IMG/VR virus record: IMGVR_UViG_3300008111_000002
Span: 1-64,000 of that record
Strand: one strand, 5' to 3'
DNA: 64,000 bases
The position numbers and the translations under genes are program-made. Positions 4,448 through 64,000 of the stretch are shown here, piece by piece. Within the stretch, counting starts at the first letter, position 1. Each line of letters starts with the position of its first letter. Below the pieces are notes generated by a model. That model saw only the letters and a program-made list of their open reading frames with translations, was not told where the DNA came from and searched no databases.

Positions 4448-4468
4448 AGATAAGGATCGGAGCGAAAA

Positions 4469-6256: not shown

Positions 6257-6262
6257 CAGAAC

Positions 6263-6270: not shown

Positions 6271-6288
6271 TACTAAAGAGAGCGGAAT

Positions 6289-6846: not shown

Positions 6847-6858
6847 CGGAGAAATAAA

Positions 6859-7974: not shown

Positions 7975-7979
7975 AAATT

Positions 7980-51438: not shown

Positions 51439-51736
51439 AAAATTTTTTCGACCGCCAGAAAAAGTTGTTAATGAATGGCCGGAAATTTTTGAGGACATGT
51501 ATATGAGCACCATGCCTCTCTATTATACAAAATCTATGCAGATTAAATTTGATAATGGGAGGATATGGCAGCTCAATATACAAGAGTTAGTAGTTGAACA
51601 TGGTAGTGATGAATTATCTACTAAACTATTAGAAACATTTAAAGAATATCAACAAGACATCACCGGTGTAGATTTTGAAATTGATATCGATAAATTAAAA
51701 AAAGATATTAAAAAATCAATTAAGAAAATTCTTTAA
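51431..51736 (+). CDS. Hypothetical protein
   Basis: Last plus-strand gene; convergent overlap with the island gene. Confidence 0.6.
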   Translation: MPKKFFRPPEKVVNEWPEIFEDMYMSTMPLYYTKSMQIKFDNGRIWQLNIQELVVEHGSDELSTKLLETFKEYQQDITGVDFEIDIDKLKKDIKKSIKKIL

Positions 51737-52925
51737 AATACTTTTTAGTACTAGATACAATTTCATCAAGGTATTGTTTTCTAAAGTCTAATTGTTTATA
51801 AATGTATAAATTATGTTCAACGATTGACAACCATTTGTTATAATATTTTTCTTTATCATCATTTATCCAAGATAAAAAAGATTCGTGAAATTTAGCGAAT
51901 CTTTTTTTATGATCCGCAATATCGTCATAACTTGTATCTATGAAATCAGTTCTAAATCCATAATTTTGTAATTTTTTTAATATTCCAACTTGTCCAAGTA
52001 TAATAAATGGATGTCCCATAGCAATTGGGCGAAATGTTTTTTCTGTTATAAACATTCCCGGATCCTCAAAAAAAGTTTCTGTTGAAACGGTTAAGAATGT
52101 ATTTTCAAAAATACATAAATTACTTTTTCCAGCAAGATGTGCTGTTCTTAATTCTTCTGTCGAAACATCAGCTTCTATTGGATATTGTGTTTTTAAAGTT
52201 TTACTATAAGTTTCCGATGATTCATCTAAAAATGTAGGATTTAATGATTCTAAATTAGTATCAAAAAAAGATCCACCAGAAACGATTCCTCGAGATAGTA
52301 AATTATTTTTTGCTAAAAAATATAAATGATCTGTTCTATGACTTCTGTGCGCCCTGTTTAAGCTATTAAAAAGTTTAGCACGATTCTTTATTGATTTATA
52401 AAAAATAGGATCATATTGTTTTTTCCAAGCCTCTCCAACCCATTCTATACCTTCAATAAATTCTAAAGTTGGTTTTAGATTATTTTGCCGACACCACTTA
52501 TTGTATTGTTCTTTTGCTTTTAAATTTCCAGATACGATTAGTACACTCTTAGAAGGTAATTCTAATTTATCAAAAGATTCTGTCAGGTATCTATAACAAT
52601 CATATTTTGATGTAAAACTATCTCCTTCAACTACAGAAATTATTACGATTCTTAATTTTTTTTGTTTTGTAGCCTCTATCACATGAATCGGAATATTATC
52701 TAAAATTTTAAAACTATCTTGATGTTCGTCTGTACACCAATCATAAGAATGTCTACTAACTTCAATAAAATATATTCCGGGATAATCATAATTTTTACTA
52801 CAAACAAATTCTAATTCAGGATGTGTATTTCTTTTAACAAAATATTCATAAGGTCTGACATTTTTTACCTGATCTATATGAGAAAGATTTATTTCATTCT
52901 GATTATCAAAATAACACTGTATCAT
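51720..52925 (-). CDS. GT10/fucosyltransferase-like GT-B protein, paralog 1
   Basis: FNSLNRAHRSHR, TETFF..FITEKTFRPIAMGHPFIILG, GFRTDFIDTSYD. Confidence 0.55.
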   Translation of the reverse strand: MIQCYFDNQNEINLSHIDQVKNVRPYEYFVKRNTHPELEFVCSKNYDYPGIYFIEVSRHSYDWCTDEHQDSFKILDNIPIHVIEATKQKKLRIVIISVVEGDSFTSKYDCYRYLTESFDKLELPSKSVLIVSGNLKAKEQYNKWCRQNNLKPTLEFIEGIEWVGEAWKKQYDPIFYKSIKNRAKLFNSLNRAHRSHRTDHLYFLAKNNLLSRGIVSGGSFFDTNLESLNPTFLDESSETYSKTLKTQYPIEADVSTEELRTAHLAGKSNLCIFENTFLTVSTETFFEDPGMFITEKTFRPIAMGHPFIILGQVGILKKLQNYGFRTDFIDTSYDDIADHKKRFAKFHESFLSWINDDKEKYYNKWLSIVEHNLYIYKQLDFRKQYLDEIVSSTKKYFKEFS

Positions 52926-53514
52926 ATCCCCTCGCTAGTATCACACCATTATTTTGAGAATAAACAATTCTGTAATTACGACTGACCAGGAACGGCACAA
53001 CAGCAGAGCATTTTCCTATATAAATTCCGCTATGTTCTTGCAACGGTGTATCATCGCAAATAATAATAGACTTATCAGACATATAAGGATAACAATTTAT
53101 CATTTGATTTAAATGTTCTGCTACACAATTAAGATTAGTCCATTCTAAATTAAATTTTTCTCGATATAAATTTTTTAATCCAGTTTCATCTGGTTTCATT
53201 GGACGATGATTCCAATCATAATTATCTAGATATAAAATTTTTATTTTTTTGTTAAGAGTTGGTAAAACTTCCTTGGTCCATTTTGATCCGTCGCTGACCA
53301 CAAAGGTAGTATTTGTTAAATGAGATAAATTATTTCTAGCAGATTCTGATATATCAACACTATAAAAAGGAACGTTAAATTTCTTCGAATGCAAATTAAA
53401 AAATTCAGTAGAACCTTCTCCCCTCTCGCTACCGATTTCTAATATAATGTCTTTATGCTGATCGTATTCAGCATATAGAATGAAGGGAATCGAGTTTTTA
53501 TGAAAGTTTGCCAT
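52906..53514 (-). CDS. Class I SAM-dependent methyltransferase
   Basis: ILEIGSERGEGST, YSVD, ILYLDN, IICDDT. Confidence 0.7.
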   Translation of the reverse strand: MANFHKNSIPFILYAEYDQHKDIILEIGSERGEGSTEFFNLHSKKFNVPFYSVDISESARNNLSHLTNTTFVVSDGSKWTKEVLPTLNKKIKILYLDNYDWNHRPMKPDETGLKNLYREKFNLEWTNLNCVAEHLNQMINCYPYMSDKSIIICDDTPLQEHSGIYIGKCSAVVPFLVSRNYRIVYSQNNGVILARGYDTVLF

Positions 53515-54600
53515 TTAGTAAATCCTTGCTGGGGTCCATTTCATATCTTTTAAAAAAAAGAAAAAATAATCGTCGGTCATTCCGTATAATTTAAAAGGTC
53601 TATCTTCTAACATAAATTTTAATGCCTCTGGAACTATTCTTTGTTTATCATACATAATTTCTATAATTTTAGATTTATTATGAATCAATTTAGGAAGAAG
53701 TTTAAAATACAAATTCTGTAATTCTGGCTCTGATAAATTTATAATCGATCTAATATTTTCAATGATTCCGGAAATTCTATCTTCTAATAAATCGCAATCG
53801 TCAAAACTATAATCAAATATTTCATCATATAATTTCAAATTAAATTTTTTACAAAAATAATCTTTATAAAAATGTTTGCAGCTAAGAACTAAAAAAGGTT
53901 TAAACCAAGCAATACTTCTTAATGTCTTTTCAGTTAAATGAAATCTACCTTCTTCAAACCAAGTTTCGTTAATAATATCAACAAAACAGTTTTCTATACT
54001 TTTGGGTTTTCTAAAATGTTCTGTAGAATCTTTTGAATATAGATCTTCATCCATTCGTATTCTACCATCATAATATCTCCATCTACAATGATGATCTCTT
54101 AATACTTCGTTCGCTCTGGTAAAAGTTACCATACCCTTGTCAATCCATCCCTCTTTAGCTAATGCATCAACCATTTTAATTCTATGTTCTGCAACACGCA
54201 CATTATAACAACTATAATAATATCTAAAATTTCTAGGACCTCGCATATAAGGAACAATCGCTACTCCCTGATCGTATTTTTCAGGAAAAGACATGTTGTT
54301 AATAAATGATGGAAATGCAGTAATAATATTACCATAAGATGTTTCACATTTTACATGAGGGTGCAACCATTTATCTAAATGTGGTGTTACAACATTTATA
54401 ATTTTATTATTTTTGATACACCAATCTTTCAAATGTATAAAAGCATTTCCATATAATTCCTCTATCGCCACTTCTGTTACGCTATGAACAATAATTTTAT
54501 CGGGGTTTATTTCTTCAATTGATTTAGATAAAAATAACCATTCGTCATCTGTACTAGGAAATAATGAATGACAATTTTGAATAATATATGCTTTTATCAT
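53515..54600 (-). CDS. GT10-like GT-B protein, paralog 2
   Basis: YSCYNVRVAEHR, INETWF..HLTEKTLRSIAWFKPFLVL, FDYSFD. Confidence 0.55.
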   Translation of the reverse strand: MIKAYIIQNCHSLFPSTDDEWLFLSKSIEEINPDKIIVHSVTEVAIEELYGNAFIHLKDWCIKNNKIINVVTPHLDKWLHPHVKCETSYGNIITAFPSFINNMSFPEKYDQGVAIVPYMRGPRNFRYYYSCYNVRVAEHRIKMVDALAKEGWIDKGMVTFTRANEVLRDHHCRWRYYDGRIRMDEDLYSKDSTEHFRKPKSIENCFVDIINETWFEEGRFHLTEKTLRSIAWFKPFLVLSCKHFYKDYFCKKFNLKLYDEIFDYSFDDCDLLEDRISGIIENIRSIINLSEPELQNLYFKLLPKLIHNKSKIIEIMYDKQRIVPEALKFMLEDRPFKLYGMTDDYFFFFLKDMKWTPARIY

Positions 54601-55727
54601 GTTATATTAAATACTGGTTCGATTAAATTGTTAATAAATTTTAAATTATTATATTTTGACAAATATAATTTTATATCAGGAGTGAGGTATACAGTGTCTT
54701 TGACATAAACTGTATAATTTTCTTTTAAAAATTTTTCGCACAATTTTAATTGATGACTTTCTTCAAAAATATCAATTCCCTTTTTATATGAAACATATTC
54801 AAAATAAAAAGGAAGACGTTTTATATTTTGTTCTATATAATACTGCTTTAAGAATTCTAAATGATCAAGATTAAAATCGTCTATCATTTTTCCAAAATTA
54901 AAACTATTTCCAGAATCCATTAACGCATTTCCAAATGCTCTATTATCTCTAGGTAAACATGGACCTCCGAATCCAAATCCGTAATTTAAAAAATCATTTC
55001 CTATGCGTCGATCAGTGCCAATTGTTGATAACACGATATCTATTTCAGAGAATAATTTGTTTTTTATTAAATATTGACCAACCAAATTAGCAAAACTTAT
55101 TTTTAAAGTTAAAAACGAATTAATAGCAATCTTTGTAATTTCTGCTGATCTGAAAGACATTGTTTTTACTTCAGAATTAACTTCTTGAAAAGATTTATAT
55201 ACCTTTATTAATTTATTAATCGAATCAATATCTTCTCCGCCGATTAATACTAAATCAGCTTTTTTTAAATCTTGTATGATCGACCCTTGGGCAATAAATT
55301 CTGGATTGTATAACAATGATGCTCCAGTATCTTTTAAAATATTATTAAAAATTTCGCAATCACCCGGATTAACCGTCGATGTAATAACAATAATCTTATT
55401 GAATAAATTTACTTTTTTAAATTCAGAAAATATATTAAAAATAGATGTTACGTCGTATTTTCCGTTATCTAAAGAAGGTGTCGAAACAATAATAAAGATT
55501 ATATCTGATTTATCAATTAATTCTTTGTTATCTGATGTTGCTGATAATTTTTTTGATTCGATGAGGTATTGATTTACAAATGGTTCATTTGAATAAAATT
55601 TTTTATCGTTTAGACTATCGACATAGGACTGATTTATGTCAGAAACAATAACATTAAAACCAGCTCTTTCGATAACGAGAGCCATTGATAATCCTAATTT
55701 TCCTGCACCGATGATACCAACATTCAT
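54597..55727 (-). CDS. ugd: UDP-glucose/GDP-mannose 6-dehydrogenase
   Basis: GIIGAGKLG, FIIVSTP, STVNPG, YNPEFIAQG, AEITKIAINSF, GFGFGGPCLPRD. Confidence 0.85.
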   Translation of the reverse strand: MNVGIIGAGKLGLSMALVIERAGFNVIVSDINQSYVDSLNDKKFYSNEPFVNQYLIESKKLSATSDNKELIDKSDIIFIIVSTPSLDNGKYDVTSIFNIFSEFKKVNLFNKIIVITSTVNPGDCEIFNNILKDTGASLLYNPEFIAQGSIIQDLKKADLVLIGGEDIDSINKLIKVYKSFQEVNSEVKTMSFRSAEITKIAINSFLTLKISFANLVGQYLIKNKLFSEIDIVLSTIGTDRRIGNDFLNYGFGFGGPCLPRDNRAFGNALMDSGNSFNFGKMIDDFNLDHLEFLKQYYIEQNIKRLPFYFEYVSYKKGIDIFEESHQLKLCEKFLKENYTVYVKDTVYLTPDIKLYLSKYNNLKFINNLIEPVFNIT

Positions 55728-55734
55728 AAAAGTT

Positions 55735-56436
55735 TTAATAAAATACTGATTTGTGGGGAGACTCTAAAGGTGTTGAATTGCTCAGATAATAGATCGACAT
55801 TAAATTTTGTCTTTCGATATCCTCGGGGCAAAGTATCGGCTCTGTAAAACCATGAAAAAACTCTTGCTCATATTCCCAAAAAATTAATCTATTGGGTGTT
55901 GGCTCAACTGTTAATAATTTTTCAGTTTTAGAACGATTCCAAAATTCTAACTGTCCGTTCCATTCAGATTTCCATTCTGGATTTGAATAAATTATTAAAT
56001 TGAACGCTCGATTTAATTTTAATGAATTATTCCAATTAAAATCAATATGCAACCCCAATTGAGAATTGCGAGGAGTTGATGTTATGCCTGCTCCTAAATA
56101 ATGAGGATCGGGTATTATTCCTTCAACTCCTGTAATTTTTGTCATCCATGAAATAAAATTATGTCCTGTTAAATTTAACATTATATTCTGCAATATATCT
56201 GAACCGGTAAAATCTCGAGTTTCTTTTCTCGGACCGGAAGTATTGCCAAGATTCTTATGAATCCATTTATCAGCAGGATAGTTTCTTATATCATTACATA
56301 GATTTTTGTATATTTCTTCGGGAAAAAAATTATCAACAATTATATGTTTGATAGGTGAGGACACCTTATACTGATTTGATAAAGATTCAGTAGCATAATA
56401 TTTTTCTAAATTGTTAAAAAAACTGTTAATTTCCAT
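55735..56436 (-). CDS. 2OG-Fe(II) oxygenase
   Basis: IIVDNF, LHIDFN (HxD), GQLEFW, FFHGF, RQNL. Confidence 0.85.
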   Translation of the reverse strand: MEINSFFNNLEKYYATESLSNQYKVSSPIKHIIVDNFFPEEIYKNLCNDIRNYPADKWIHKNLGNTSGPRKETRDFTGSDILQNIMLNLTGHNFISWMTKITGVEGIIPDPHYLGAGITSTPRNSQLGLHIDFNWNNSLKLNRAFNLIIYSNPEWKSEWNGQLEFWNRSKTEKLLTVEPTPNRLIFWEYEQEFFHGFTEPILCPEDIERQNLMSIYYLSNSTPLESPHKSVFY

Positions 56437-57581
56437 TAGAGATATTCATATATAAAATCAAAAGATGCATTAGTAAAAGAAGTTGCTTTTTGTTGCTCTA
56501 ATCTTTGATAATTTCTTTCACATATTTCTTTAATACTATTTAATAGATTATAATATTCAGATGTTGGAAGATGTACTATTCTTTCTACTTCATCAACGAT
56601 CATTTTTAATCTTGTTTGATTATCTTCTTCTTTATCATAATCTTCATTAATAAACTTACCAAAAGTTTCATAGCCCATGGATCTCAGATCTTCTAAAATG
56701 TACGGAGTTCCAAATATAATAAAAGGTTTTTTACATGCTATCGGTTTATAAATTTTTTCAGTTATAAAACTAGGAGCAGCGCCTTTTATATATTTTCCAT
56801 TCATATGGCTCAAAAAAGGATCAAAAAATGTTTCTATTGCAATGTGAAAATCAGAAGAAGCAACTGTAGAATAGGTAATATCTGCCCATTTATTATAAAC
56901 GTTATCGGTAGAATCAATTCTATGGGGTACTTTAAATAACCATTCTAAAATTTTATCAGTAATAGGAATTTTTAATTTTTTTAAATCTTCCATCATATCA
57001 GAAATAGTAAAAACTGTCTTTTCATAAGGATGTATATTATAAAAAGAATATGTAAAATCTTTTATTAAATCCCGTTCTATTAATTCACAATATAACCAAA
57101 GACGCCAATTTCTATAATTTCTACTAAGAACACTAAATTTTGATTTTGATTCAAGATTTAAGGTATCAAGATTTACCTTACTCAGTAAAAAATTAAATGT
57201 TGTAAAATTGATCCCAGATATATTTTGTTCAATTAATTTTTTTTCTAAAAATTGTTTATGAACATCATCTGCTAGCGCAATATAAATTTGTGTTGGATTA
57301 ATATTTCTTGTTTTAATTAATTCGATTACTTCGTTTAAAAAATTATAATTAAACGTTTCTCCGCAATTTTCATGAAATAATTTTGCAGACGGTGTCGTTC
57401 TTAAATGTTCCCAATGTATTTCATCAATGCAATCTTTAAATTTCACACCATGTTGTTGATCATCATAAAAGTGATGATAAAATACATCATCTGATGAAGG
57501 AACCCATGTTTTTAAATTATTAAATTTTTTATGATCAAATTTAATATGATGAAATTTTTCAGTTTTACTGTATATTGGCAT
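56436..57581 (-). CDS. GT10-like GT-B protein, paralog 3
   Basis: FSVLSRNYRNWR, IETFF..FITEKIYKPIACKKPFIIFG, GYETF..INEDYD. Confidence 0.55.
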   Translation of the reverse strand: MPIYSKTEKFHHIKFDHKKFNNLKTWVPSSDDVFYHHFYDDQQHGVKFKDCIDEIHWEHLRTTPSAKLFHENCGETFNYNFLNEVIELIKTRNINPTQIYIALADDVHKQFLEKKLIEQNISGINFTTFNFLLSKVNLDTLNLESKSKFSVLSRNYRNWRLWLYCELIERDLIKDFTYSFYNIHPYEKTVFTISDMMEDLKKLKIPITDKILEWLFKVPHRIDSTDNVYNKWADITYSTVASSDFHIAIETFFDPFLSHMNGKYIKGAAPSFITEKIYKPIACKKPFIIFGTPYILEDLRSMGYETFGKFINEDYDKEEDNQTRLKMIVDEVERIVHLPTSEYYNLLNSIKEICERNYQRLEQQKATSFTNASFDFIYEYL

Positions 57582-58530
57582 TTACTTGTTCCTCAATCCA
57601 TTTATATGTATGGATCAACCCATATTCGAGATCCTCGCTCGGTCTCCATTCTAAAAATTTTTCAATTAAATCGTTATGGCTTGATCGTCCCATAACACCT
57701 ATTGGACCTTCAATATTGTTAATTACAATTTCTTTTTTAGCAATCTTGGCAATTAATAGTGCAAGATCATTAATAGAAATCATTCTTTCGCTTCCTAAAT
57801 TAATTGGAATATTAATATTGCTTTCCATTATTTTCAATAATCCCGTAATGCATTCGTCAATATATAAAAATGTCCTTGTTTGATTTCCAGGACCCCAAAT
57901 ATCAACTATGCCGTTGGTTGACATTGCAACTTTACGAGACAATGCTGCAGGGGCTTTTTCTCTTCCATCATTCCACGCACCGTATGGTCCATAAACATTA
58001 TGTAACCTAACTACTTTTGCATCAATGTTGTAATTTTTTCTATGTGCCAAATAAAGTCTTTCACTGAACAGTTTTTCCCAACCATATTCTGTATCTGGTT
58101 GGGCCGGATATGCAGTATGCTCTTCACATATAGGATTATCGGGATCCTCTTGATTAAATTCTGGATAAACACATGCACTACTTGTATAAAGTATTTTTTT
58201 GATACCTTTTTTAGAAGCTTCATGAATAATATTAAGATTAATCATTGCAGAGTTGTGCATTATATCAGAGTCGTGCTCACCAATTGCAATATAGCCTGTT
58301 CCTCCCATATCTGCAGCCAGTTGATAAATTTCATCGAGATTTTCAGTAATTAAATTTTCTACATTTCTTGTATCTCGCAAATCTCTAATATAAAACTCAT
58401 CTGCTTCTGTTTCTCTAAATTGATGATATTTTAAATCTACACCAATTACATAATGGCCTTGTTTTTTAAGAGCAGATACTAAATGGCCGCCAATAAATCC
58501 CCCGGCGCCGCAAACTAAAATTCTTTTCAT
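57565..58530 (-). CDS. gme: GDP-mannose 3,5-epimerase-like SDR
   Basis: GAGGFIGGHL, QLAADMGG, YTSSACVYP, YGWEKLFSE (YxxxK), GREKAPAALSRK. Confidence 0.85.
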   Translation of the reverse strand: MKRILVCGAGGFIGGHLVSALKKQGHYVIGVDLKYHQFRETEADEFYIRDLRDTRNVENLITENLDEIYQLAADMGGTGYIAIGEHDSDIMHNSAMINLNIIHEASKKGIKKILYTSSACVYPEFNQEDPDNPICEEHTAYPAQPDTEYGWEKLFSERLYLAHRKNYNIDAKVVRLHNVYGPYGAWNDGREKAPAALSRKVAMSTNGIVDIWGPGNQTRTFLYIDECITGLLKIMESNINIPINLGSERMISINDLALLIAKIAKKEIVINNIEGPIGVMGRSSHNDLIEKFLEWRPSEDLEYGLIHTYKWIEEQVNANIQ

Positions 58531-58540
58531 TTTAAGTCCT

Positions 58541-59851
58541 CTAAATTCCGTATGTATTTAAAAGATACTCTACTTCAGGATTTCCCATTGTTAATAAATG
58601 ATTTCGATTAAATTCAAGAGTATCTTTTAATTTATATGTTAAATCAATTAATTTTGATTCTGGCCATTTTGATATGTTTTCTATTAGATTCATAATAAAT
58701 GAAAATCTTTTTTCGTGATCAAGAATATCATCATATGACTCATCCCAAAATTCCGAAAATGTTTTAAATCCCGATTCTTTTAAATGACCCAATGTTCCCG
58801 GAGCAGCAAAAATAATAAACGGTTGCATAAATGCAATTGGTTTATAAGTTTTTTCAGTTATATGTCTTATATTATTAAAAAAATAAGTTTCGGTAACAAT
58901 ATTGATATAACTATTTTTGTAAAAATCATTCACTTCGGATATTTTCTTCTCCATGGGATATTTAGAAAAATCCGGAGTATCTAATGTTAAAGGCAGAAGC
59001 ACCGAAGAATCATAGACAGTATCCATTCCTAAGCCTAGATTCTTATGTAAATTAATAACATGGGAAGCGTTTTCTATAAAAGGGCGGCCCGATTCTGGTT
59101 GATCTTTCGCCATACTCATATAGGTAACTTCTAGCAAATTTCTTTTAAAAAAATCTAGATATACCAACAATCTATGTTCATTATATCTACGATTAAAGCA
59201 TAAAAATTTTTTCTTTCTTGGGCCAGGAACATATGGATCTGTAGATGCTAGTGCATCTCCAACGTCACACCGATCAAATCTAAAAGTCGGAAAATATTCA
59301 ATCTTAATTTCTTCGGGTATGTTATATTGTTTACAAAAATCTTTATAAATTTCTTTTCCGTTTTGACAATTGCTTACATATACAATTTGAGATAATGGAG
59401 CTCCCTTACCTTTAAAATAATCTGTCATTGCTTTTAAAAATTCGTCATACATATATCCTTCATGTAATAATGTTATAAGAATATAACCTTCTTTTTTTAG
59501 AATTTTTTGAGCCACGGTATCACTGATTCTATTATTATCAAGTAATCCGTTTGAATGATGAAAAGCTCCTAAGATGTCTCGATAGTGATAATTAGTAAAA
59601 TTTAATTCATAAAAAAATGGTTCATCTGGAATATTTGATGGAGAACAAATTCTTAAATTTTTTCCAAATTTATTATAGAAATGAGGCCGCTGTCTTAAAT
59701 CTTCTTTATAACCGTACATAGCATAATCAACATTAATAAATGATGATGTCATGAAATCCATCAATGTTGGAACTCTATTATTTGTAAGGGGTCCGTCCGG
59801 ACCAATCCATTCGTACACAAAATTAATTTTTCTATTATTGCTTGCATTCAT
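58541..59851 (-). CDS. GT10-like GT-B protein, paralog 4
   Basis: FLCFNRRYNEHR, INIVTETYF..HITEKTYKPIAFMQPFII, GFKTF..WDESYD. Confidence 0.55.
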   Translation of the reverse strand: MNASNNRKINFVYEWIGPDGPLTNNRVPTLMDFMTSSFINVDYAMYGYKEDLRQRPHFYNKFGKNLRICSPSNIPDEPFFYELNFTNYHYRDILGAFHHSNGLLDNNRISDTVAQKILKKEGYILITLLHEGYMYDEFLKAMTDYFKGKGAPLSQIVYVSNCQNGKEIYKDFCKQYNIPEEIKIEYFPTFRFDRCDVGDALASTDPYVPGPRKKKFLCFNRRYNEHRLLVYLDFFKRNLLEVTYMSMAKDQPESGRPFIENASHVINLHKNLGLGMDTVYDSSVLLPLTLDTPDFSKYPMEKKISEVNDFYKNSYINIVTETYFFNNIRHITEKTYKPIAFMQPFIIFAAPGTLGHLKESGFKTFSEFWDESYDDILDHEKRFSFIMNLIENISKWPESKLIDLTYKLKDTLEFNRNHLLTMGNPEVEYLLNTYGI

Positions 59852-61196
59852 TATAAAACTCTTCTAATAAAGGAAAGGTAGCTATCAAATCTGTTCCTCT
59901 ACGTTTATCATATTCATTAAACCAGTTAAAAAAATCTTTTCTTCCTTCTTTAATTCTGTCTTCAGTATAATTTGTTGTTTCCATATAGTGAACAACACGC
60001 TTAAACTTTTCAAACTCCAATTCTGAAAATTTAGTTCGATCTTTGTCATCCAAATTATTTTTTATAAAATTTAAATGGTTATGCATAAATGGCATGAATT
60101 GATCCTTTGGTAATATATTCATATCATATTGCAAAGGTTCTTTCAAGAACGGGGTATCAAAACGAATACGCTGCCATTTATTTTGTTGGTATCCATTATA
60201 TTTTGTACGCCATTCTAAAATCTTTTTTAACAAACTTTGAAAATTAGTTACTGTTAAGATATTAAATGTTATCATAAACGTAACAGGCAAACTTGTTTTA
60301 GTTAGATATGTGTCTAAGTTACGCTCCCAAATAGACAGATCTAGACCGGTGCGAATGTATTCTGCCTGCGGACCCCAGGTGTCGACACTGGTAAAAATCT
60401 TAAAGTCTTTAATTTTACCGTTGCTGACTAGGTTATTAACCTTTTCAACTAATCTATCAATTAAAATAGGTTTAACACCAAAGTTGCTATTAATGTTTAA
60501 CTCTAAATTAGGCAGTGGATTTTGTTCTAAATCTTCTAATAATTTCCATGTGCTCTGTTGTAGTAATGGTTCGCCGCCAGTTATCCGAAGTATTGTTAAT
60601 GTCTTACGCACCTCCGGCCACCATTCCCACCAAGCAGCAACATAAGGATTAGTTTCTTCTTCGTGTATTCTAAACCAATCGATATCATTGCGATGATTCT
60701 TTACAGTAGTATAAGGACCGTAGTCCTTAATTTCTTTATAATAACTGCTGCTATGTTTAGGATGGCAGTATCCGCATTTAAAATTGCATTCATTTCCAAA
60801 TGAAATTTCTATATATTGCGGATTAACTGGTTTTAAAGGATTAGATTTGATTGCCGCAAATCTTTCATCTGTATAGATGCTGGCATTACGTTCTTTTCTA
60901 TCACTTATATAATCTTCGCCCAATGTTTCGATATTCCAACAATAATTACAGCCACTGGGTTTTTCACCATCTATCATGGCAGCACGTTCTGATAATTTTT
61001 GTTGAGTGTTATGTAATGCGTTTGGATTTAACGCTATTTCTTTTAAAGGTATTGTATGTGGTGGAGGATGATAACAACTGTGTGTTTCACCTGTTTGTAG
61101 ATATATTGTAGTATGATGCCATTTTGCAAGACAAAAAGTAGGACTGATTTCATTCATTATAGGAATGAATTTTTTAATCCTTGTTATATCTTGCAT
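59835..61196 (-). CDS. Radical SAM protein with N-terminal SPASM/twitch-like domain
   Basis: FCLAKWHH..HSCYH..GCNYCW N-domain; ECNFKCGYC (CX3CX2C); ITGGEPLL; INSN. Confidence 0.85.
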   Translation of the reverse strand: MQDITRIKKFIPIMNEISPTFCLAKWHHTTIYLQTGETHSCYHPPPHTIPLKEIALNPNALHNTQQKLSERAAMIDGEKPSGCNYCWNIETLGEDYISDRKERNASIYTDERFAAIKSNPLKPVNPQYIEISFGNECNFKCGYCHPKHSSSYYKEIKDYGPYTTVKNHRNDIDWFRIHEEETNPYVAAWWEWWPEVRKTLTILRITGGEPLLQQSTWKLLEDLEQNPLPNLELNINSNFGVKPILIDRLVEKVNNLVSNGKIKDFKIFTSVDTWGPQAEYIRTGLDLSIWERNLDTYLTKTSLPVTFMITFNILTVTNFQSLLKKILEWRTKYNGYQQNKWQRIRFDTPFLKEPLQYDMNILPKDQFMPFMHNHLNFIKNNLDDKDRTKFSELEFEKFKRVVHYMETTNYTEDRIKEGRKDFFNWFNEYDKRRGTDLIATFPLLEEFYNECKQ

Positions 61197-62253
61197 TAAA
61201 ATGTTCCTTTAACCAATCATAGTCGTTTATCTTTGCTAACTCGCTGGGTGCATTTTGCCATTTTAAACCAAACCATTTTCCAATAGTTGCACCATCTAAG
61301 GCATATTCTCCAAAAGGTTTATCCTCGCCTTTAGTACACCATATGTCTAAACGTTCTTCTGATTCTTTACTTATCTGTCCATGAAGCTTTTTACTGGCCA
61401 ACTTGACACATTCTCTAAATGCTGAACGCCATGTGCTATATGAATCTGTGTTAAAGGCGGTAATGTTACTGACCTGATCCATAGCTTTAAACTTCTTGCT
61501 AATACTAGTTGTCATATCTGGACTGTTAACATCAACTTCTAAGGTTAATTTGGTAGGTAATAATTTAACACCACCATACCCGTACTCTAAATTGTTAATT
61601 GGATTACGACTACGCCATACATGTACAACATCTCTATCATGCTTAGGAACATAGTAGTTTAGTTTAAAATCTTCAATTAACTCTGCATCTGCATCGACTA
61701 CCCAAAACATAGGAGTTGTAGATATCTTTGCTGCTGCTATGTGTGCTTGGTGTATACCTTTAATTCCGTGTATTCTTTTAGCATTAGGGTATAATTGTAA
61801 AAGACTATTATAATTTTTGTCTGCAAATGATTCGTTGTAACTTATAAACACAACATCAGACGGAATCGAATATGTTAGATTAATGTCAATGTCTTTAATT
61901 TTTCCTGTAAAAAATTGATATTGCCATTCCCTATTGGTTATTTGAGTCCCTCTAGGAATGAGATAAACACCTAGATATGTTTTGTTATCTTGTAAAAATC
62001 TGTGTATGTATTCTTTATCCCACTCTGGAACTACATAACTGAAATCGTAATCAATGACACAATCGTCATCAACTATCCATGCAAATTTTGTAAAGGTATG
62101 TGATAATGCTTCTTGTACAGTTGCACGTTTTTGTGCGTGGGGAAATTTATTTTTTAATTGCTGCCATCTTTGATCAGAGGAGGGAGTTCTTTGATCTATA
62201 AAAAATAAATCATACATTTTTAGTTGGGAAATAGTAAGTAGCACAGAGATCAA
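61174..62253 (-). CDS. GT-A-like glycosyltransferase with internal duplication
   Basis: Two related halves (FFID..WIVDDD and FISYNE..WVVDAD) carrying DxD motifs; WRSAFREC. Confidence 0.6.
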   Translation of the reverse strand: MISVLLTISQLKMYDLFFIDQRTPSSDQRWQQLKNKFPHAQKRATVQEALSHTFTKFAWIVDDDCVIDYDFSYVVPEWDKEYIHRFLQDNKTYLGVYLIPRGTQITNREWQYQFFTGKIKDIDINLTYSIPSDVVFISYNESFADKNYNSLLQLYPNAKRIHGIKGIHQAHIAAAKISTTPMFWVVDADAELIEDFKLNYYVPKHDRDVVHVWRSRNPINNLEYGYGGVKLLPTKLTLEVDVNSPDMTTSISKKFKAMDQVSNITAFNTDSYSTWRSAFRECVKLASKKLHGQISKESEERLDIWCTKGEDKPFGEYALDGATIGKWFGLKWQNAPSELAKINDYDWLKEHFNARYNKD

Positions 62254-63103
62254 AAGTTTCTCTGTAAAGATCAGCAGTAAATTTACTTTGTTTTTCGTTT
62301 AACCAAGGCCATTCAAAACCCAACTCTCTATGTATTTTTGTTCCAAGATCTTGAGCATCTTGTTCTACACTATCATGATTAACATTTTCTTCATAGATAT
62401 TTTTTAAGATTTCAAAATCTCTTACATCAACATAGTTCCAGTTTGTACAATTAGTCATCCAGGTTCCCATACGAGCACCCAGAATAGCATACTTTCCGTT
62501 TTCAATATGAGTTCCGACTGTACTCCATATCTTAAGACGGTGTATATTATGCCACCATATTTGTTGTTTGATTTCGGTAGGTTTAACCTTAACACCATCT
62601 TTAAGAGTCATTTTAACTCCTTCGCGGAATCCTGCTCTCCATGCCTGAAATGGGGTGCAATTAATAACACTTTGACTAAAAGAACGAGGATGATTTTTAT
62701 ATCCATCCTCCCAACAAAAATCTACCTGTGCTTGTGGTGTGTCCGCAGCTTCGTGAGTTTTCATATTAAGAATAAAATCTTTGTGCCAGATTTTAAGACC
62801 ACCGTTACCATACCGTAGTCCGTTAACAGAATTTACACCACACCAACCATAGACTCTTATTTTTTCATTCGACATATCTAAATCCATGTCAAAAAAAGTT
62901 GAATCTACTATATTATCTGCGTCGACTGTGATTAACCAGTCTGTTTCTGATTGATCTGCAGCAACTTTATGCGCAGCATCGCTGCCTTTAACTCCGTGTA
63001 CACGTTTAGCCCAAGGTACTTTTGTTAATAAATCTGCATAATTTTTTTCAGCATTTGGTTCATCATAACTGATAAAAACGGTATCAAACTCAATTACTTT
63101 CAT
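62210..63103 (-). CDS. GT-A-like glycosyltransferase, paralog of the adjacent gene
   Basis: FISYDEPNA, RVHGVKG, ITVDAD, WRAGFREG. Confidence 0.6.
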   Translation of the reverse strand: MKVIEFDTVFISYDEPNAEKNYADLLTKVPWAKRVHGVKGSDAAHKVAADQSETDWLITVDADNIVDSTFFDMDLDMSNEKIRVYGWCGVNSVNGLRYGNGGLKIWHKDFILNMKTHEAADTPQAQVDFCWEDGYKNHPRSFSQSVINCTPFQAWRAGFREGVKMTLKDGVKVKPTEIKQQIWWHNIHRLKIWSTVGTHIENGKYAILGARMGTWMTNCTNWNYVDVRDFEILKNIYEENVNHDSVEQDAQDLGTKIHRELGFEWPWLNEKQSKFTADLYRETFDLCATYYFPTKNV

Positions 63104-63119
63104 TTTACCCCAATCTTAA

Positions 63120-63638
63120 TTAGAGTAAAGGAATCCAAAGAAGGAATCCTTGAGTTGCTAAAAGTGTAGCAAACCCCCCTAAAGATATTCCAATCCAATA
63201 CATACGTATACTAAATGTTAGCATAGAAGCTGCTAAAATAACAATAGCAATTTGATAGAATGCGTTAGCATATGTATACCAGGGGCTTCTTTTTTCTGCC
63301 ACTGCTCTTTCTGCTTCAATGGCTCTTGCTTTAGTCATTAATTCTTTTTTACCTTCCCCCGTTTTAGGATCAGATTCATATCTTTCAATTTTTTCTTTTA
63401 ATTTTTCTGCTTTTTTAGTTTCTTTTCTAAACACAGCATCATCATATGCAATTTCAGCTAACGATTGTTTTACAGATTTTGCTTGATAAAAAGACCAAAT
63501 GTTATTTGATTCGATTGTATTATTTAAAATTTGAGAAGAATTATCACCGTCTAATAAAGATGTTATAGCTAATAGTGCTGCTAATACTGTTATTATCCAA
63601 CCAGTGCGCTCTTTGATTTGTTCTTTATTGTCACTCAT
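63120..63638 (-). CDS. DUF4337-like membrane protein
   Basis: N-terminal TM, NNIWSFYQAKSVK motif, coiled coil, two C-terminal TMs. Confidence 0.7.
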   Translation of the reverse strand: MSDNKEQIKERTGWIITVLAALLAITSLLDGDNSSQILNNTIESNNIWSFYQAKSVKQSLAEIAYDDAVFRKETKKAEKLKEKIERYESDPKTGEGKKELMTKARAIEAERAVAEKRSPWYTYANAFYQIAIVILAASMLTFSIRMYWIGISLGGFATLLATQGFLLWIPLL

Positions 63639-63648: not shown

Positions 63649-63999
63649 TTATTTTACTTCAAAGTTTACTTTATCAAAAATTTTAATATAATAAATGCTA
63701 ATATCTTCTGGTAAAGTTGAACCATCAAATTCTACTTCAACCTCATTGTTATTAACTAACGTATTGGCCGAAACTACTATTGGACTTATTAATTCATTAG
63801 GATTATTATATTTTGTAATGTAAAAACGAATTCGAACTTCATCATCTGGATTAGAAATTAATGATTTAACATAATTTTTAGCACCATCAGTAATTAATGC
63901 AACTTTGAAAACTTTTTTCTCTAATAAAATAGATATTCTTGCATCTAAGAATGATTCATTTATATCGTTATCAAATTCTATTCTTACAAAATCTCCAAA
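63649..63999 (-). CDS. Hypothetical protein, 5'-truncated by the window edge
   Basis: Open frame from 63999 (FGDFVRIEFDNDINESFLDARIS...) to TAA at 63651-63649. Confidence 0.6.
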   Translation of the reverse strand, partial: FGDFVRIEFDNDINESFLDARISILLEKKVFKVALITDGAKNYVKSLISNPDDEVRIRFYITKYNNPNELISPIVVSANTLVNNNEVEVEFDGSTLPEDISIYYIKIFDKVNFEVK

Positions 64000-64000
64000 C

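What the first reader, a model, noticed from the sequence alone, without database searches (positions are those of the whole stretch)
51720..63103. Inverted, very AT-rich glycan-biosynthesis island
Seen: 11 overlapping minus-strand genes, visibly more AT-rich than the replication region (strongest at 51.7-60 kb): four GT10-like paralogs, two GT-A proteins, an epimerase, a dehydrogenase, a methyltransferase, a 2OG oxygenase and a radical SAM enzyme. No flippase, polymerase or transporter is seen. Inference: a cytoplasmic pathway making a modified oligosaccharide for virion-protein glycosylation, DNA hypermodification or host surface conversion.
Basis: partly seen in the sequence, partly recalled or inferred. 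Interest (0 to 1): 0.65.

Follow-up and report, generated by a model that had tools for sequence, protein, structure and literature searches.

The report
Jumbo-phage late glycosylation operon
An uncultured freshwater jumbo phage carries, just downstream of its tail-fibre genes, a tightly packed set of soluble sugar-building enzymes that probably decorates a cytoplasmic target, most likely virion proteins, with an unusual L-galactose-type glycan; clusters of this kind are known in phages, but several of these enzyme families are undescribed.

Summary
There are eleven abutting minus-strand genes at 51720-63103, and they lie in the most AT-rich stretch of the 210-kb record. The annotations mostly stand, with four refinements.

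- The "epimerase" is a full-length homolog of GDP-mannose 3,5-epimerase, so the likely donor is GDP-L-galactose or GDP-L-gulose.
- The four paralogs form a virus-only GT-B family with no Pfam model. GT10 membership is not supported by sequence, although fucosyltransferases are among the tied best fold matches.
- g11, and by paralogy g10, have a GT-A fold.
- The radical SAM enzyme belongs to NF033640 and has an N-terminal auxiliary cluster.

It is not an isolated inverted island. It is the 3' end of a 49-kb leftward structural block. It probably forms one late transcription unit of 16 genes that starts beyond the window, behind an ATAAATA late-promoter-like site, and includes two more probable GT8-like transferases.

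The module is syntenic in many metagenomic phages. Its core also sits downstream of a tail-fibre-like gene in Ralstonia phage RsoM2USA.

None of the eleven genes encodes a membrane protein. DNA glycosylation is disfavoured, because no hydroxypyrimidine-making enzymes were found. Virion-protein glycosylation is the best guess, but the target remains unproven.

The parts
51720..52925 (-). g1, 401 aa: GT-B glycosyltransferase, paralog of g8 (new family without a Pfam model). Last gene of the unit. Its end overlaps the end of the convergent + strand gene 51431-51736.
   Evidence: blastp to g8 at 2.5e-20, 29% identity over 339 aa. Invariant R...ETxF...TEK...PF motif shared by the four paralogs. No Pfam, NCBIfam or PHROG hit. 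GC 0.269.
52906..53514 (-). g2, 202 aa: probable class I SAM-dependent (TylF/Methyltransf_24-like) methyltransferase.
   Evidence: PF13578 at E 0.0031, 18.8 bits, below the 26.3 cut-off. phrog_24975 at 1.7e-7. Conserved E26-I-G-S...E33-G-S-T motif I and D54 in 7 orthologs.
53515..54600 (-). g3, 361 aa: GT-B paralog. Together with g4 it forms an accessory insertion that is absent from the nearest syntenic relatives.
   Evidence: blastp to g8 at 7.6e-14. g3 and g4 are missing in L003, L012, L020, L021 and L047. g3-like and g4-like genes occur in the more distant group.
54597..55727 (-). g4, 376 aa: NDP-sugar 6-dehydrogenase (UDP-glucose dehydrogenase-like).
   Evidence: PF03721 at 1.2e-33 and PF00984 at 6.7e-18. 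TIGR03026 at 213.7 bits, above the 189.8 cut-off. phrog_9148 at 3e-100. PDB 3gg2 at 2e-33, with UDP-Glc DH entries ahead of GDP-Man DH at 9e-21. Invariant GxGxxG, K199, N203, C257 and D261.
55735..56436 (-). g5, 233 aa: 2OG-Fe(II) oxygenase of the prolyl-hydroxylase-like clade.
   Evidence: PF13640 at 2.3e-12. The nearest solved proteins are OGFOD1 and HIF prolyl hydroxylase. Invariant H130-x-D132...H195...R209.
56436..57581 (-). g6, 381 aa: GT-B paralog. It has the lowest GC of the island (0.251).
   Evidence: blastp to g8 at 7e-18. It shares the ETxF...TEK...PF motif.
57565..58530 (-). g7, 321 aa: GDP-mannose 3,5-epimerase-like SDR, the probable source of GDP-L-galactose or GDP-L-gulose.
   Evidence: phmmer against PDB: GDP-mannose 3',5'-epimerase 2c59 at 1.8e-88, 300 bits, residues 3-317. 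The next family, UDP-GlcA decarboxylase, scores only 2e-24. PF01370 at 6e-44. 50-54% identical to epimerases of 53 cyanomyovirus records, one of them annotated as GME.
58541..59851 (-). g8, 436 aa: central member of the new GT-B family.
   Evidence: AF2 model with pLDDT 85. VIA Z 10.8-10.2, tied among T4 beta- and alpha-glucosyltransferases, a Rickettsia GT, FUT9 and H. pylori FucT. Foldseek finds GT-B enzymes at about 1e-4. More than 1000 metagenomic homologs, none with a Pfam domain. No tblastn hit in 50,697 phage records. The ESM-Atlas shape neighbours are virus-only, and one cluster is fused to an SDR domain.
59835..61196 (-). g9, 453 aa: radical SAM enzyme with an N-terminal auxiliary-cluster ('twitch') domain. 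It is the most conserved gene of the module.
   Evidence: NF033640 at 2.4e-95, 320 bits, above the 170 cut-off. Invariant C22, C41, C83, C86 and C137-x3-C141-x2-C144. 58-85% identical across syntenic phage contigs. Cellular homologs are mostly in Bdellovibrionota, often next to GT2/GT4 genes and further rSAM paralogs.
61174..62253 (-). g10, 359 aa as listed from a TTG start; more likely 347 aa from the ATG at 62217. GT-A-like protein with an extra N-terminal region of about 125 aa. Paralog of g11.
   Evidence: blastp to g11 at 34% identity, 8e-28. PF00535 at E 1e-4, 22.8 bits, just under the 23.3 cut-off. Close homologs are 345-347 aa and the family consensus starts at 'MYD'. Invariant DxD.
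62210..63103 (-). g11, 297 aa: GT-A fold transferase (residues 1-150) plus a helical C-terminal domain of unknown fold class.
   Evidence: AF2 model with pLDDT 87.7. VIA: B4GALNT1 Z 11.5, WrtF fucosyltransferase 10.7, STIV A197 10.7, PBCV-1 A64R 10.3, SpsA 10.3. Invariant D61-x-D63. Atlas nearest cluster is 'GT family 2 protein' at 0.99. Its profile has no PDB sequence hit.
63120..63638 (-). g12, 172 aa: DUF4337 protein with C-terminal TM-like segments. It is an insertion specific to this phage and sits between the upstream part of the unit and g11.
   Evidence: PF14235 at 8e-31. KD19 maximum 1.97 at residue 126. Absent from syntenic relatives.
63649..64000 (-). 3' part of u210 (210 aa, unknown function), cut by the window end. 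In the full record (G000:C1) the unit continues with u286 at 64268-65128 and u269 at 65125-65934 (both probable GT8/GT77-like GT-A transferases), then u116 at 65931-66281, and a late-promoter-like CATAAATA at about 66314.
   Evidence: ORFs in L006. Profiles of u286 and u269 hit only glycogenin in PDB (E 0.009 and 0.16). The nearest named Atlas clusters of u286 are PF03407/PF01501 clusters at 0.95-0.96. The ATAAATA motif is 33 nt upstream of u116, and no other copy lies between it and g1. The motif is conserved in L003 and L009.

Best explanation
The eleven genes are the downstream two-thirds of a single, probably late-expressed, 16-gene operon (u116 to g1, about 51.7-66.3 kb of the full record). 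The operon follows the tail-fibre and baseplate genes of a T4-like jumbo phage. It encodes a soluble, cytoplasmic glycosylation pathway.

Proposed steps:
- g7 converts host GDP-mannose into GDP-L-galactose or GDP-L-gulose.
- g4 supplies a uronic-acid nucleotide sugar.
- Up to eight transferases build an oligosaccharide. Four are GT-B paralogs of a new, fucosyltransferase-like family (g1, g3, g6, g8). Two are GT-A proteins (g10, g11). Two are GT8/GT77-like proteins lying upstream (u269, u286).
- g2 (methyltransferase), g9 (N-twitch radical SAM) and g5 (prolyl-hydroxylase-like oxygenase) tailor the sugars and/or prepare the acceptor.

There is no lipid-carrier-initiating transferase, flippase, polymerase or exporter. 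The acceptor is therefore most likely a cytoplasmic macromolecule, most probably virion proteins (tail fibres or baseplate) made at the same time.

Shown: gene order, paralogy, folds, family memberships, catalytic residues, synteny, composition and the promoter-like motif.
Inferred: donor identity, co-transcription, late timing and the protein acceptor.
For: - Enzyme identities.
- GME-like g7: 300 bits to GDP-mannose 3',5'-epimerase against 89 bits for the next family.
- Functional coupling of the GT-B family with the SDR: a viral cluster of 705-aa proteins fuses a g8-like fold to an Epimerase/GDP_Man_Dehyd domain. g7 matches positions 292-597 of the 715-position phrog_540.
- Structural context: the minus-strand block 51720-100494 contains tail fibres and a gp10-like baseplate protein directly upstream.
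- Conserved linkage: the order 'tail fibre - u116 - u269 - u286 - (u210) - g11 - (g10) - g9 - g8 - g7 ...' recurs in dozens of IMG/VR contigs at 28-85% identity. In Ralstonia phage RsoM2USA, the only record among 50,697 deposited phage records to match g9 or g11, the core follows a tail-fibre-like gene and lies near proteomically confirmed structural genes.
- Promoter: ATAAATA occurs only 32 times on both strands of 210 kb. Twenty-seven copies are intergenic, almost all 11-60 nt upstream of a same-strand start. One lies 33 nt upstream of u116, and none lies inside the unit. It is conserved at the same place in L003 and L009.
- No TM segment in any enzyme.
- g5 is nearest to protein prolyl hydroxylases.
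- The g9 family sits among GT2/GT4 genes in Bdellovibrionota chromosomes.
Against: - No acceptor has been identified. The tail-fibre proteins show no collagen-like or other obvious acceptor repeats.
- No RNA data exist for this phage, so late expression rests on a motif only.
- The ATAAATA motif also precedes some genes of the replication block, and it is absent upstream of the module in more distant relatives.
- Soluble transferases also act on lipid-linked intermediates in ordinary O-antigen pathways, so the lack of membrane proteins does not exclude a host-envelope target.
- The best fold matches of g8 include T4 DNA glucosyltransferases, tied at Z 10.6-10.8.
- The RsoM2USA virion proteomics covered only ten abundant bands and reports no glycosylation.
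Confidence: 0.45

Rival explanations
1. Host-envelope remodelling. The soluble phage transferases hijack the host's own undecaprenyl-linked intermediates and its flippase or ligase, and so change LPS, capsule or flagellar glycans late in infection. This could serve superinfection exclusion or prevent progeny from adsorbing to debris. It is the usual reading of cyanophage 'LPS' clusters.
For: - g7-like GME genes sit in cyanomyovirus clusters that are annotated as cell-wall/LPS synthesis (PMC9602691).
- Peripheral soluble GTs are normal in O-antigen pathways (established knowledge).
- The g9 family occurs in bacterial chromosomes among GT2/GT4 genes and, in one case, between two flagellin genes.
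- The phage has a second cluster with GT25 ('LPS biosynthesis') and PseB/CapD-like genes at 167-172 kb.
Against: - There is no initiating phosphoglycosyl transferase, flippase, polymerase, ligase or O-acyltransferase.
- The GT-B family is virus-only in the Atlas shape search and is very rare in the cellular loci fetched.
- The module is tightly and anciently linked to tail-fibre genes rather than to lysis or early genes.
- A lytic jumbo phage gains little from late surface conversion.
Confidence: 0.2
2. DNA hypermodification. The transferases glycosylate a hydroxylated pyrimidine in phage DNA, as T4 does with hmC and as RB69 and DLP3 do with poly-arabinosylated 5-hydroxycytosine. The purpose would be to evade restriction.
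For: - The phage is T4-like. Its DNA polymerase matches more than 2,600 phage records, among them many E. coli and cyanobacterial phages.
- T4 beta- and alpha-glucosyltransferases are among the tied best fold matches of g8 (Z 10.8 and 10.6).
- Multi-GT clusters with their own nucleotide-sugar genes are known to glycosylate DNA (PMC13326640; bioRxiv 10.1101/2023.12.21.572611).
- The island abuts the replication module.
Against: - There is no thymidylate-synthase-family gene in the 210 kb held.
- In complete relatives the TS gene is canonical (LPPCH, PFNIASY with Asn) and lies far from the module. Two complete relatives have no TS gene at all.
- No C5-DNA methyltransferase and no TET/JBP match was found in G000-G004. 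The TET control was uninformative.
- No dCTPase or nucleotide kinase lies in or beside the island, unlike the RB69 and DLP3 clusters (PMC13326640).
- g5 is prolyl-hydroxylase-like, not TET-like.
- The unit is oriented with, and promoted like, the structural genes.
Confidence: 0.08
3. A soluble glycoconjugate or modified peptide. The conserved core (u116, u269, u286, u210, g11, g9, g10) glycosylates and radical-SAM-modifies a small phage-encoded protein or metabolite. u116 or u210 could be the substrate or a scaffold. This would resemble glycocin or RiPP maturation, with a role in assembly, signalling or counter-defence.
For: - Auxiliary-cluster radical SAM enzymes are typical peptide maturases (established knowledge; review cited in PMC5332604).
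- In Bacteriovoracaceae the g9 family lies with M16 peptidases, ABC ATPases and other rSAMs as well as GTs.
- The SunS S-glycosyltransferase is among the GT-A fold matches of g11 (Z 9.4).
- Two small conserved proteins of unknown function sit inside the core.
Against: - No precursor-peptide features were identified, and there is no leader-peptidase or exporter in the phage.
- Eight transferases and dedicated nucleotide-sugar enzymes argue for a sizeable glycan rather than a single sugar.
- Fold matches of this level are generic for GT-A.
Confidence: 0.12

Closest known systems
Cyanomyovirus 'LPS / cell-wall' glycan gene clusters (for example Synechococcus phage S-SCSM1 ORF113-135; SynMITS9220M01 genes 187-200)
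   Same: - T4-like phages with a run of soluble glycosyltransferases plus nucleotide-sugar enzymes.
- Their epimerase is 50-54% identical to g7 and is annotated in S-SCSM1 as GDP-mannose 3,5-epimerase. It sits next to fucosyltransferase-type GTs, and these genomes carry many 2OG-Fe(II) oxygenases (PMC9602691).
- The function is equally untested.
   Different: - No homolog of the g8 GT-B family was found in any deposited phage record, and g9 and g11 matched only RsoM2USA. u269 and u286 were not searched against the deposited phages.
- The SynMITS9220M01 cluster lies among metabolic and tRNA genes, not behind tail fibres.
Ralstonia jumbo phage RsoM2USA ORF345-355 (MG752970)
   Same: It is the only record among 50,697 deposited phage records that matches g9 or g11. 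The order is the same: tail-fibre-like gene, then u116, u269, u286, u210, g11, g9 and a g10-like gene, at 27-44% identity.
   Different: - It lacks the GT-B paralogs, the methyltransferase, the oxygenase and the dehydrogenase. Its only SDR is a distant one (23% to g7) lying upstream of the core.
- All these genes are annotated as hypothetical and none has been studied (PMC8504454).
Chlorovirus (PBCV-1) and other giant-virus capsid glycosylation machineries
   Same: These are virus-encoded, cytoplasmic glycosylation of structural proteins by soluble GTs, independent of the host. PBCV-1 A64R is among the GT-A fold matches of g11 (Z 10.3). The topic is reviewed in PMC9614988.
   Different: They are eukaryotic viruses with unrelated sequences, and no radical SAM component is known from my reading. 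Here the protein target is only inferred.
DNA glycosylation systems of T4-like phages (T4 a-gt/b-gt; RB69 and DLP3 poly-arabinosyl-5-hydroxycytosine clusters)
   Same: They have GT-B transferases, several per cluster, with dedicated nucleotide-sugar genes in Straboviridae-like genomes (PMC13326640). T4 glucosyltransferases are tied best fold matches of g8.
   Different: Those clusters contain a ThyA-homolog hydroxylase or hydroxymethylase, a dCTPase and a nucleotide kinase. None was found here or next to the module in complete relatives.
GT10 alpha-1,3/4-fucosyltransferases (H. pylori FucT, human FUT9)
   Same: - GT-B fold, with Z 10.2-10.3 and the lowest rmsd among the top rows.
- An invariant acidic residue followed by a T-E-K motif in the C-terminal domain. 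From memory this resembles the GT10 nucleotide-binding motif, so it is a lead only.
- A probable GDP-beta-L-sugar donor, given the neighbouring GME.
   Different: None of 27 family members matches PF00852 even at E <= 10. The family profile hits no solved fucosyltransferase by sequence. Other GT-B families score the same by fold.
Cytoplasmic hydroxyproline-linked glycosylation of Skp1 in Dictyostelium and Toxoplasma (my own knowledge, not tested here)
   Same: A soluble prolyl 4-hydroxylase is followed by several soluble GT-A and fucosyltransferase-type enzymes, including a GT77. Together they build an oligosaccharide on a cytoplasmic protein. That matches the combination of g5, the u269/u286 (GT8/GT77-like) pair and the fucosyltransferase-like GTs.
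   Different: This is only an analogy of logic. No sequence relationship has been shown, and g5 is not part of the ancestral core of the module.

Membership tests
GT10 fucosyltransferases (Pfam PF00852) | Significant match to the family profile | tested here: not met
   PF00852 does not appear for any of the 27 members of the g8 family, even at E <= 10. There is no hit at 0.01 for g1, g3, g6 or g8.
GT10 fucosyltransferases (Pfam PF00852) | GT-B fold with closest structural similarity to solved GT10 enzymes | tested here: inconclusive
   FUT9 (8d0o) scores Z 10.3, H. pylori FucT (5zoi) 10.2, and plant FUT13 and FUT11 9.2 and 8.9. These are tied with the T4 glucosyltransferases, a Rickettsia GT and GT4 enzymes at Z 10.8-9.7.
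GT10 fucosyltransferases (Pfam PF00852) | Use of a GDP-beta-L-fucose-type donor | not testable with these tools
   The only evidence is indirect: the adjacent GME-like g7 and fusions of the GT-B fold to an SDR/GDP_Man_Dehyd domain.
GDP-mannose 3,5-epimerase (GME) | Full-length similarity to characterised GME that is clearly stronger than to other SDR nucleotide-sugar enzymes | tested here: met
   2c59 at 1.8e-88, 300 bits, residues 3-317. 8sg0 at 3.5e-84. The next family, UDP-GlcA decarboxylase, scores 2e-24.
GDP-mannose 3,5-epimerase (GME) | Catalytic acid/base pair and epimerase activity on GDP-mannose | not tested
   Only the GxxGxxG motif and K153 were seen as invariant across a broad SDR set.
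Nucleotide-sugar 6-dehydrogenase (TIGR03026) | Score above the curated cut-off, and the catalytic Cys/Lys/Asn/Asp present | tested here: met
   213.7 bits against the 189.8 cut-off. Invariant K199, N203, C257 and D261. Substrate (UDP-Glc or another) is not resolved: every equivalog model scores far below its cut-off.
N-terminal twitch radical SAM (NCBIfam NF033640) | Score above the cut-off, CxxxCxxC present, and additional N-terminal Cys ligands | tested here: met
   320 bits against the 170 cut-off. C137, C141 and C144, together with C22, C41, C83 and C86, are invariant in 16 sequences that include distant paralogs.
2OG-Fe(II) oxygenase, prolyl-hydroxylase-like (PF13640) | Profile match above the cut-off, with the HxD...H triad and the 2OG-binding Arg | tested here: met
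   48.2 bits against the 27 cut-off. H130, D132, H195 and R209 are invariant. The substrate (protein, sugar or other) was not tested.
Class I SAM methyltransferase (Methyltransf_24 / TylF-like) | Profile match above the cut-off; SAM motif I | tested here: inconclusive
   18.8 bits, below the 26.3 cut-off. Motif I and the acidic residue after beta-2 are conserved.
GT-A nucleotide-diphospho-sugar transferases (GT2-like) for g10 and g11 | GT-A fold with a DxD motif; family profile match | tested here: inconclusive
   The fold criterion is met: Z 11.5-10.3 to GT-A transferases over residues 1-150, with an invariant DxD. Nucleotidyltransferases of the same fold score Z about 10. PF00535 scores 22.8 bits, just under the 23.3 cut-off, for g10 only.
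GT8/GT77-like transferases for u269 and u286 (outside the window) | Significant similarity to GT8 or Nucleotid_trans families | tested here: inconclusive
   The family profiles hit only glycogenin, at marginal E-values (0.009 and 0.16). Atlas feature neighbours are PF03407/PF01501 clusters at 0.95-0.96. Single-sequence Pfam scans give nothing.
Phage DNA glycosylation system | An enzyme that puts a hydroxyl on a DNA pyrimidine: a ThyA-homolog hydroxymethylase or hydroxylase, or a C5-MTase with TET | tested here: not met
   PF00303 is absent from G000. It is canonical (Asn in PFNIASY) in G001-G003 and absent from G004 and G005. PF00145 and PF12851 are absent from G000-G004. Caveats: G000 is about 60% complete, and the TET control was uninformative.
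Wzx/Wzy- or ABC-dependent surface polysaccharide locus | Initiating phosphoglycosyl transferase, flippase or ABC exporter, and polymerase or ligase | tested here: not met
   No such Pfam or NCBIfam hits. No TM-like segments in any gene from u116 to g1 other than g12.

The most novel reading that the evidence does not exclude
A virus-specific protein-glycosylation system conserved across a large clade of uncultured jumbo phages. A core of four GT-A-type transferases and an N-terminal-twitch radical SAM enzyme is extended by a new fucosyltransferase-like GT-B family fed by a phage GDP-mannose 3,5-epimerase. Together they decorate tail fibres with an L-galactose-containing, radical-SAM-modified glycan that tunes host recognition or shields the fibres. 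The same radical SAM family performs a still unknown sugar or protein modification in Bdellovibrionota glycan and flagellin loci.
Probability: 0.25. Interest if true: 0.75.

Novelty: new variant of a known kind. Interest (0 to 1): 0.55.

Why it matters
Phage-encoded glycan clusters are widely annotated, for example as cyanophage 'LPS genes', but their targets are almost never known.

This module gives a concrete and testable case, for four reasons:
- It is conserved next to tail-fibre genes across many jumbo phages.
- Its core has a cultured representative, RsoM2USA.
- It points to a specific donor, GDP-L-galactose or GDP-L-gulose.
- It contains three enzyme families with no described function: a GT-B family with more than 1000 metagenomic members and no Pfam model, the g10/g11 GT-A family with more than 6000 members, and the NF033640 radical SAM family.

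If the target is the virion, glycosylated receptor-binding proteins would become part of the biology of phages of Gram-negative hosts. If the target is the host envelope or DNA, the module would be a new route for either.

Tried and rejected
- Megablast of the island against 50,697 phage records found nothing. tblastn of g8 also found nothing.
- Sequence searches of g8, its family profile, g10 and the g11 profile against PDB chains gave no glycosyltransferase hit. Fold assignment therefore rests on AlphaFold models.
- Foldseek against PDB for g8 gave only weak GT-B hits, at about 1e-4 with TM 0.3-0.5. VIA-align placed it in GT-B but could not separate the GT families.
- Pfam scans of all members of the g8 family and of the u269/u286 family at E <= 10 returned only noise.
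- The canonical T4 late promoter TATAAATA occurs only 3 times, against about 44 expected on both strands. I rejected it as the late signal in favour of the shorter ATAAATA, which k-mer enrichment found de novo.
- I looked for collagen-like or other repeat acceptors in the tail fibres and found none.
- I considered the MT + TET + GT route of DNA hypermodification, because the island has a methyltransferase, a 2OG oxygenase and GTs. I rejected it for three reasons. g2 is a small O-MTase-like protein. g5 is prolyl-hydroxylase-like. No PF00145 or PF12851 match was found.
- Expression could not be tested. The window's DNA is present in lake and freshwater runs from 16 studies, but no RNA run holds it.
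- I looked for a phage GDP-mannose pyrophosphorylase (PF00483) and found none.
- The literature searches for jumbo phage + glycosyltransferase + radical SAM, and for twitch radical SAM in phages, gave nothing specific.

Full report
**Setting.** The window is the first 64 kb of an IMG/VR virus record of 209,836 bp. The record is linear and CheckV estimates it at about 60% complete. Its DNA polymerase (33309-35975) is 50% identical to that of Sinorhizobium jumbo phage Phosso and 46% to that of Agrobacterium phage Atu_ph07. It also matches more than 2,600 further phage records, among them many E. coli and cyanobacterial phages. This is therefore an uncultured T4-like jumbo phage. Near-identical DNA occurs in lake and freshwater metagenomes from 16 studies, and no RNA run holds it.

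**Checking the observation.**
- Layout. The ORF listing gives exactly eleven minus-strand ORFs from 51720 to 63103. Eight of the ten junctions overlap or abut. The listed TTG start of g10 (62253) is probably wrong. Close homologs are 345-347 aa and the family consensus begins at 'MYD'. This fits the ATG at 62217.
- Composition. The island genes average GC 0.302 (GC3 0.203), against 0.378 for the other 191 ORFs (Mann-Whitney p = 3e-5). The fifteen lowest-GC 11.4-kb windows of the whole record all start between 47.5 and 55 kb.
- The same bias exists in relatives, but it is milder. Island genes there are 0.33-0.355 and flanking genes 0.38-0.42, and the GT-B paralogs are always the lowest. The bias is therefore a property of the module, not a sign of recent import.

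**What the genes are.**
- g4 is a nucleotide-sugar 6-dehydrogenase. TIGR03026 scores above its cut-off, and the catalytic K199, N203, C257 and D261 are conserved. UDP-glucose dehydrogenases are its best solved relatives.
- g7 is much more specific than 'epimerase'. It matches GDP-mannose 3',5'-epimerase over its full length at 1.8e-88 (300 bits). The next SDR family scores only 2e-24. It is 50-54% identical to epimerases in 53 cyanomyovirus records, one of which is annotated as GME.
- g5 is a 2OG-Fe(II) oxygenase with an intact HxD...H...R set. Its nearest solved relatives are protein prolyl hydroxylases: OGFOD1 and HIF-PHD.
- g9 belongs to NCBIfam NF033640 (320 bits, cut-off 170). Besides CxxxCxxC, four N-terminal cysteines are invariant even in 20%-identical paralogs.
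- g2 is only weakly a Methyltransf_24-type enzyme, but it keeps SAM motif I.

**The four 'GT10-like' paralogs.**
- g1, g3, g6 and g8 are true paralogs.
- The g8 family has more than 1000 metagenomic members without any Pfam domain. It has no hit in deposited phages.
- An AlphaFold model (pLDDT 85) has a GT-B fold.
- By VIA-align, the T4 beta- and alpha-glucosyltransferases, a Rickettsia GT, human FUT9 and H. pylori FucT are tied at Z 10.8-10.2.
- Neither the family profile against PDB sequences nor a Pfam scan of 27 members at E <= 10 recovers GT10 or any other GT family. GT10 membership is therefore not supported.
- A fucosyltransferase-like mode of action remains plausible on three grounds. 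There is an invariant E-T-x-F...T-E-K...P-F block. The GME gene lies next door. And a virus-only Atlas cluster fuses this fold to an Epimerase/GDP_Man_Dehyd domain.

**The GT-A pair.** g10 and g11 are paralogs (34% identity). The g11 model (pLDDT 88) has a GT-A fold over residues 1-150. It scores Z 11.5 to B4GALNT1 and 10.3-10.7 to WrtF, STIV A197, PBCV-1 A64R and SpsA. The DxD motif is invariant, and a helical C-terminal domain follows.

**The feature is larger than reported.**
- The minus-strand block runs from 51720 to about 100494.
- Upstream of g11 lie, in order:
  - g12 (DUF4337, the only TM-like protein, specific to this phage);
  - u210;
  - u286 and u269;
  - u116;
  - two paralogous Gly/Ser-rich proteins;
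  - three tail-fibre proteins;
  - a gp10-like baseplate protein.
- u286 and u269 carry DxD motifs. Their profiles hit only glycogenin in the PDB (E 0.009 and 0.16). The nearest named Atlas clusters of u286 are Nucleotid_trans/GT8 clusters at 0.95-0.96. They are probably two further GT-A transferases, but single-sequence Pfam scans do not confirm this.

**Promoter evidence.**
- A de novo k-mer search of upstream intergenic regions found ATAAATA enriched 26-fold.
- The motif has only 32 copies on both strands of the record. Twenty-seven are intergenic, almost all 11-60 nt upstream of a same-strand start.
- The full T4 octamer TATAAATA is strongly depleted, with 3 copies against about 44 expected.
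- One copy lies 33 nt upstream of u116, and none lies between it and g1.
- The closest relatives keep the motif at the same place; more distant ones do not.
- I therefore read u116 to g1 as one late-type transcription unit of 16 genes. This is an inference from a motif, not from RNA.

**Conservation.**
- A scan of IMG/VR with g8 returned 79 loci. Mapping the reference proteins onto them shows a fixed order in the closer relatives: tail fibre, u116, u269, u286, (u210), g11, g10, g9, g8, g7, (g6), g5, g2, g1. The same convergent genes then follow.
- g3+g4 and g12 are found only in this phage and in its identical contigs.
- A more distant group keeps u269, u286, g11 and g9 (58-63% identity). It then has two or three extra radical SAM paralogs, then g8 and g7 (60-64%), and then variable GT-B paralogs and a dehydrogenase.
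- Among deposited phages only Ralstonia jumbo phage RsoM2USA matches g9 or g11. There the order is a tail-fibre-like gene, then u116, u269, u286, u210, g11, g9 and a g10-like gene. All are annotated as hypothetical, and they lie next to proteomically confirmed structural genes.
- So there is an old core (u116 to g10) and a lineage-specific extension (the GT-B paralogs, GME, oxygenase, methyltransferase and dehydrogenase).

**The radical SAM family elsewhere.**
- Cellular homologs of g9 are found overwhelmingly in Bdellovibrionota, often in tandem arrays of up to seven paralogs.
- In the isolate Bdellovibrio sp. HCB2-146 the gene is flanked by four GT2 genes.
- In Bacteriovoracaceae it recurs with GT4 and GT2 genes, other radical SAMs, an M16 peptidase and an ABC ATPase.
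- In one Pseudobdellovibrionaceae contig, a homolog 56% identical to g9 lies between two flagellin genes.
- This supports a glycan-related role, possibly in protein glycosylation. It does not reveal the chemistry.

**Which target?**
- DNA.
  - Known phage DNA glycosylation needs a hydroxylated pyrimidine. This comes from a ThyA homolog, together with a dCTPase and a kinase next to the GTs, as in RB69 and DLP3 (PMC13326640). The alternative route is a C5-methyltransferase plus TET (bioRxiv 10.1101/2023.12.21.572611).
  - The record has no PF00303 gene.
  - In three complete relatives the TS gene is canonical (LPPCH, and Asn in PFNIASY) and lies far from the module. Two complete relatives lack a TS gene altogether.
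  - PF00145 and PF12851 are absent. The caveats are that G000 is incomplete and the TET control was uninformative.
  - DNA is therefore unlikely.
- Host envelope. This cannot be excluded, because soluble GTs normally act on lipid-linked intermediates. Against it, there is no initiating transferase, flippase, polymerase or ligase. The GT-B family is virus-only in the Atlas shape search and appeared in only a few of the cellular loci fetched. The module is also tied to tail-fibre genes.
- Virion proteins. This reading fits the position, the orientation, the promoter-like signal, the prolyl-hydroxylase-like oxygenase and the glycogenin-like transferases. No acceptor motif was found in the fibres.
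- I give virion-protein glycosylation 0.45, host-envelope remodelling 0.20, a small glycoconjugate or peptide 0.12, and DNA 0.08.

**Comparison and novelty.** Phage glycan clusters with a GME and fucosyltransferase-type GTs are already annotated in cyanomyoviruses (PMC9602691). Virus-encoded cytoplasmic glycosylation of structural proteins is established for chloroviruses (PMC9614988). The new elements here are:
- the conserved core with an N-twitch radical SAM enzyme;
- a large GT-B family without any model;
- the systematic linkage to tail-fibre genes in jumbo phages.

I rate it a new variant of a known kind, with moderate interest. The enzyme assignments are solid, but the biological target is still an inference.

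Noticed in passing
G000:C1:167234-172137 (outside the window; locus L174): A second glycan gene cluster lies on the minus strand. It holds an RmlD-like reductase, a PseB/CapD-like Polysacc_synt_2 4,6-dehydratase (1.7e-92), a Methyltransf_24 methyltransferase, a GT7C/GT2-like protein, a GT25 protein and a GT2-like protein. It is preceded by an ATAAATA site at 172168. With this cluster the phage devotes more than 20 genes to glycans.
   Followed up: partly
Whole record G000; in the window at 10525, 16070, 24840, 31278 and 49525 (+ strand): ATAAATA is a rare motif (32 copies on both strands). It is almost exclusively intergenic and lies 11-60 nt upstream of same-strand starts. The T4 late octamer TATAAATA is strongly depleted, with 3 copies against about 44 expected. 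This is probably the phage's late-promoter core.
   Followed up: partly
G000:C1:190000-207000 (outside the window): About 20 copies of TTGGTTGACA, mostly 50-90 nt upstream of small minus-strand genes. This looks like an early-gene region with sigma-70-type promoters that have an extended -35 element.
   Followed up: no
window 63120-63638 (-): g12, a DUF4337 protein with C-terminal TM-like segments, is inserted between u210 and g11. It is found only in this phage and in identical contigs. Its role is unknown.
   Followed up: partly
window 61174-62253 (-): The listed TTG start of g10 is probably wrong. The ATG at 62217 gives 347 aa, which matches the 345-347-aa homologs and the family consensus start 'MYD'.
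   Followed up: yes
G000:C1:68332-76590 (outside the window; locus L006): Four consecutive structural proteins share an N-terminal domain of about 130 aa (MPYxVxK...GKNYAGYGE..NENF..LLENFA). They are three tail fibres of 619, 651 and 632 aa and a gp10/Collar-domain baseplate protein of 713 aa. This suggests several alternative fibres docking on one baseplate site. Two paralogous Gly/Ser-rich proteins (308 and 331 aa) follow.
   Followed up: partly
L091 (Pseudobdellovibrionaceae MAG contig), 4105-10362: A g9 homolog that is 56% identical to the phage enzyme lies between two flagellin genes on a bacterial contig. Other Bdellovibrionota carry tandem arrays of up to seven paralogs (L104, L135, L161). 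The family's function is undescribed.
   Followed up: partly
L116, L141, L160, L166, L090/L156 (genome contigs): Contigs filed in MAGs named Fischerella, Pelagibacter/Pelagibacterales, Haliscomenobacter and Crocinitomicaceae carry genes of this phage module: u269-u286-g11-g9 in L116 and L160, g9 with GT-B paralogs in L141 and L166, and g11-g9-g10 in L090/L156. L116 also carries the tail-fibre and convergent flanking genes. They are probably phage contigs mis-binned into these MAGs.
   Followed up: no
window 54000-62000 (sequencing-run search): Several runs labelled 'fungus metagenome' hold the stretch completely, alongside lake-water runs. The label looks odd for a freshwater phage.
   Followed up: no
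window 51720-51736: The stop-proximal 17 nt of g1 (-) overlap the end of the convergent + strand gene 51431-51736. This leaves no intergenic room for terminators between the replication-side block and the late block. GC skew changes sign here.
   Followed up: no
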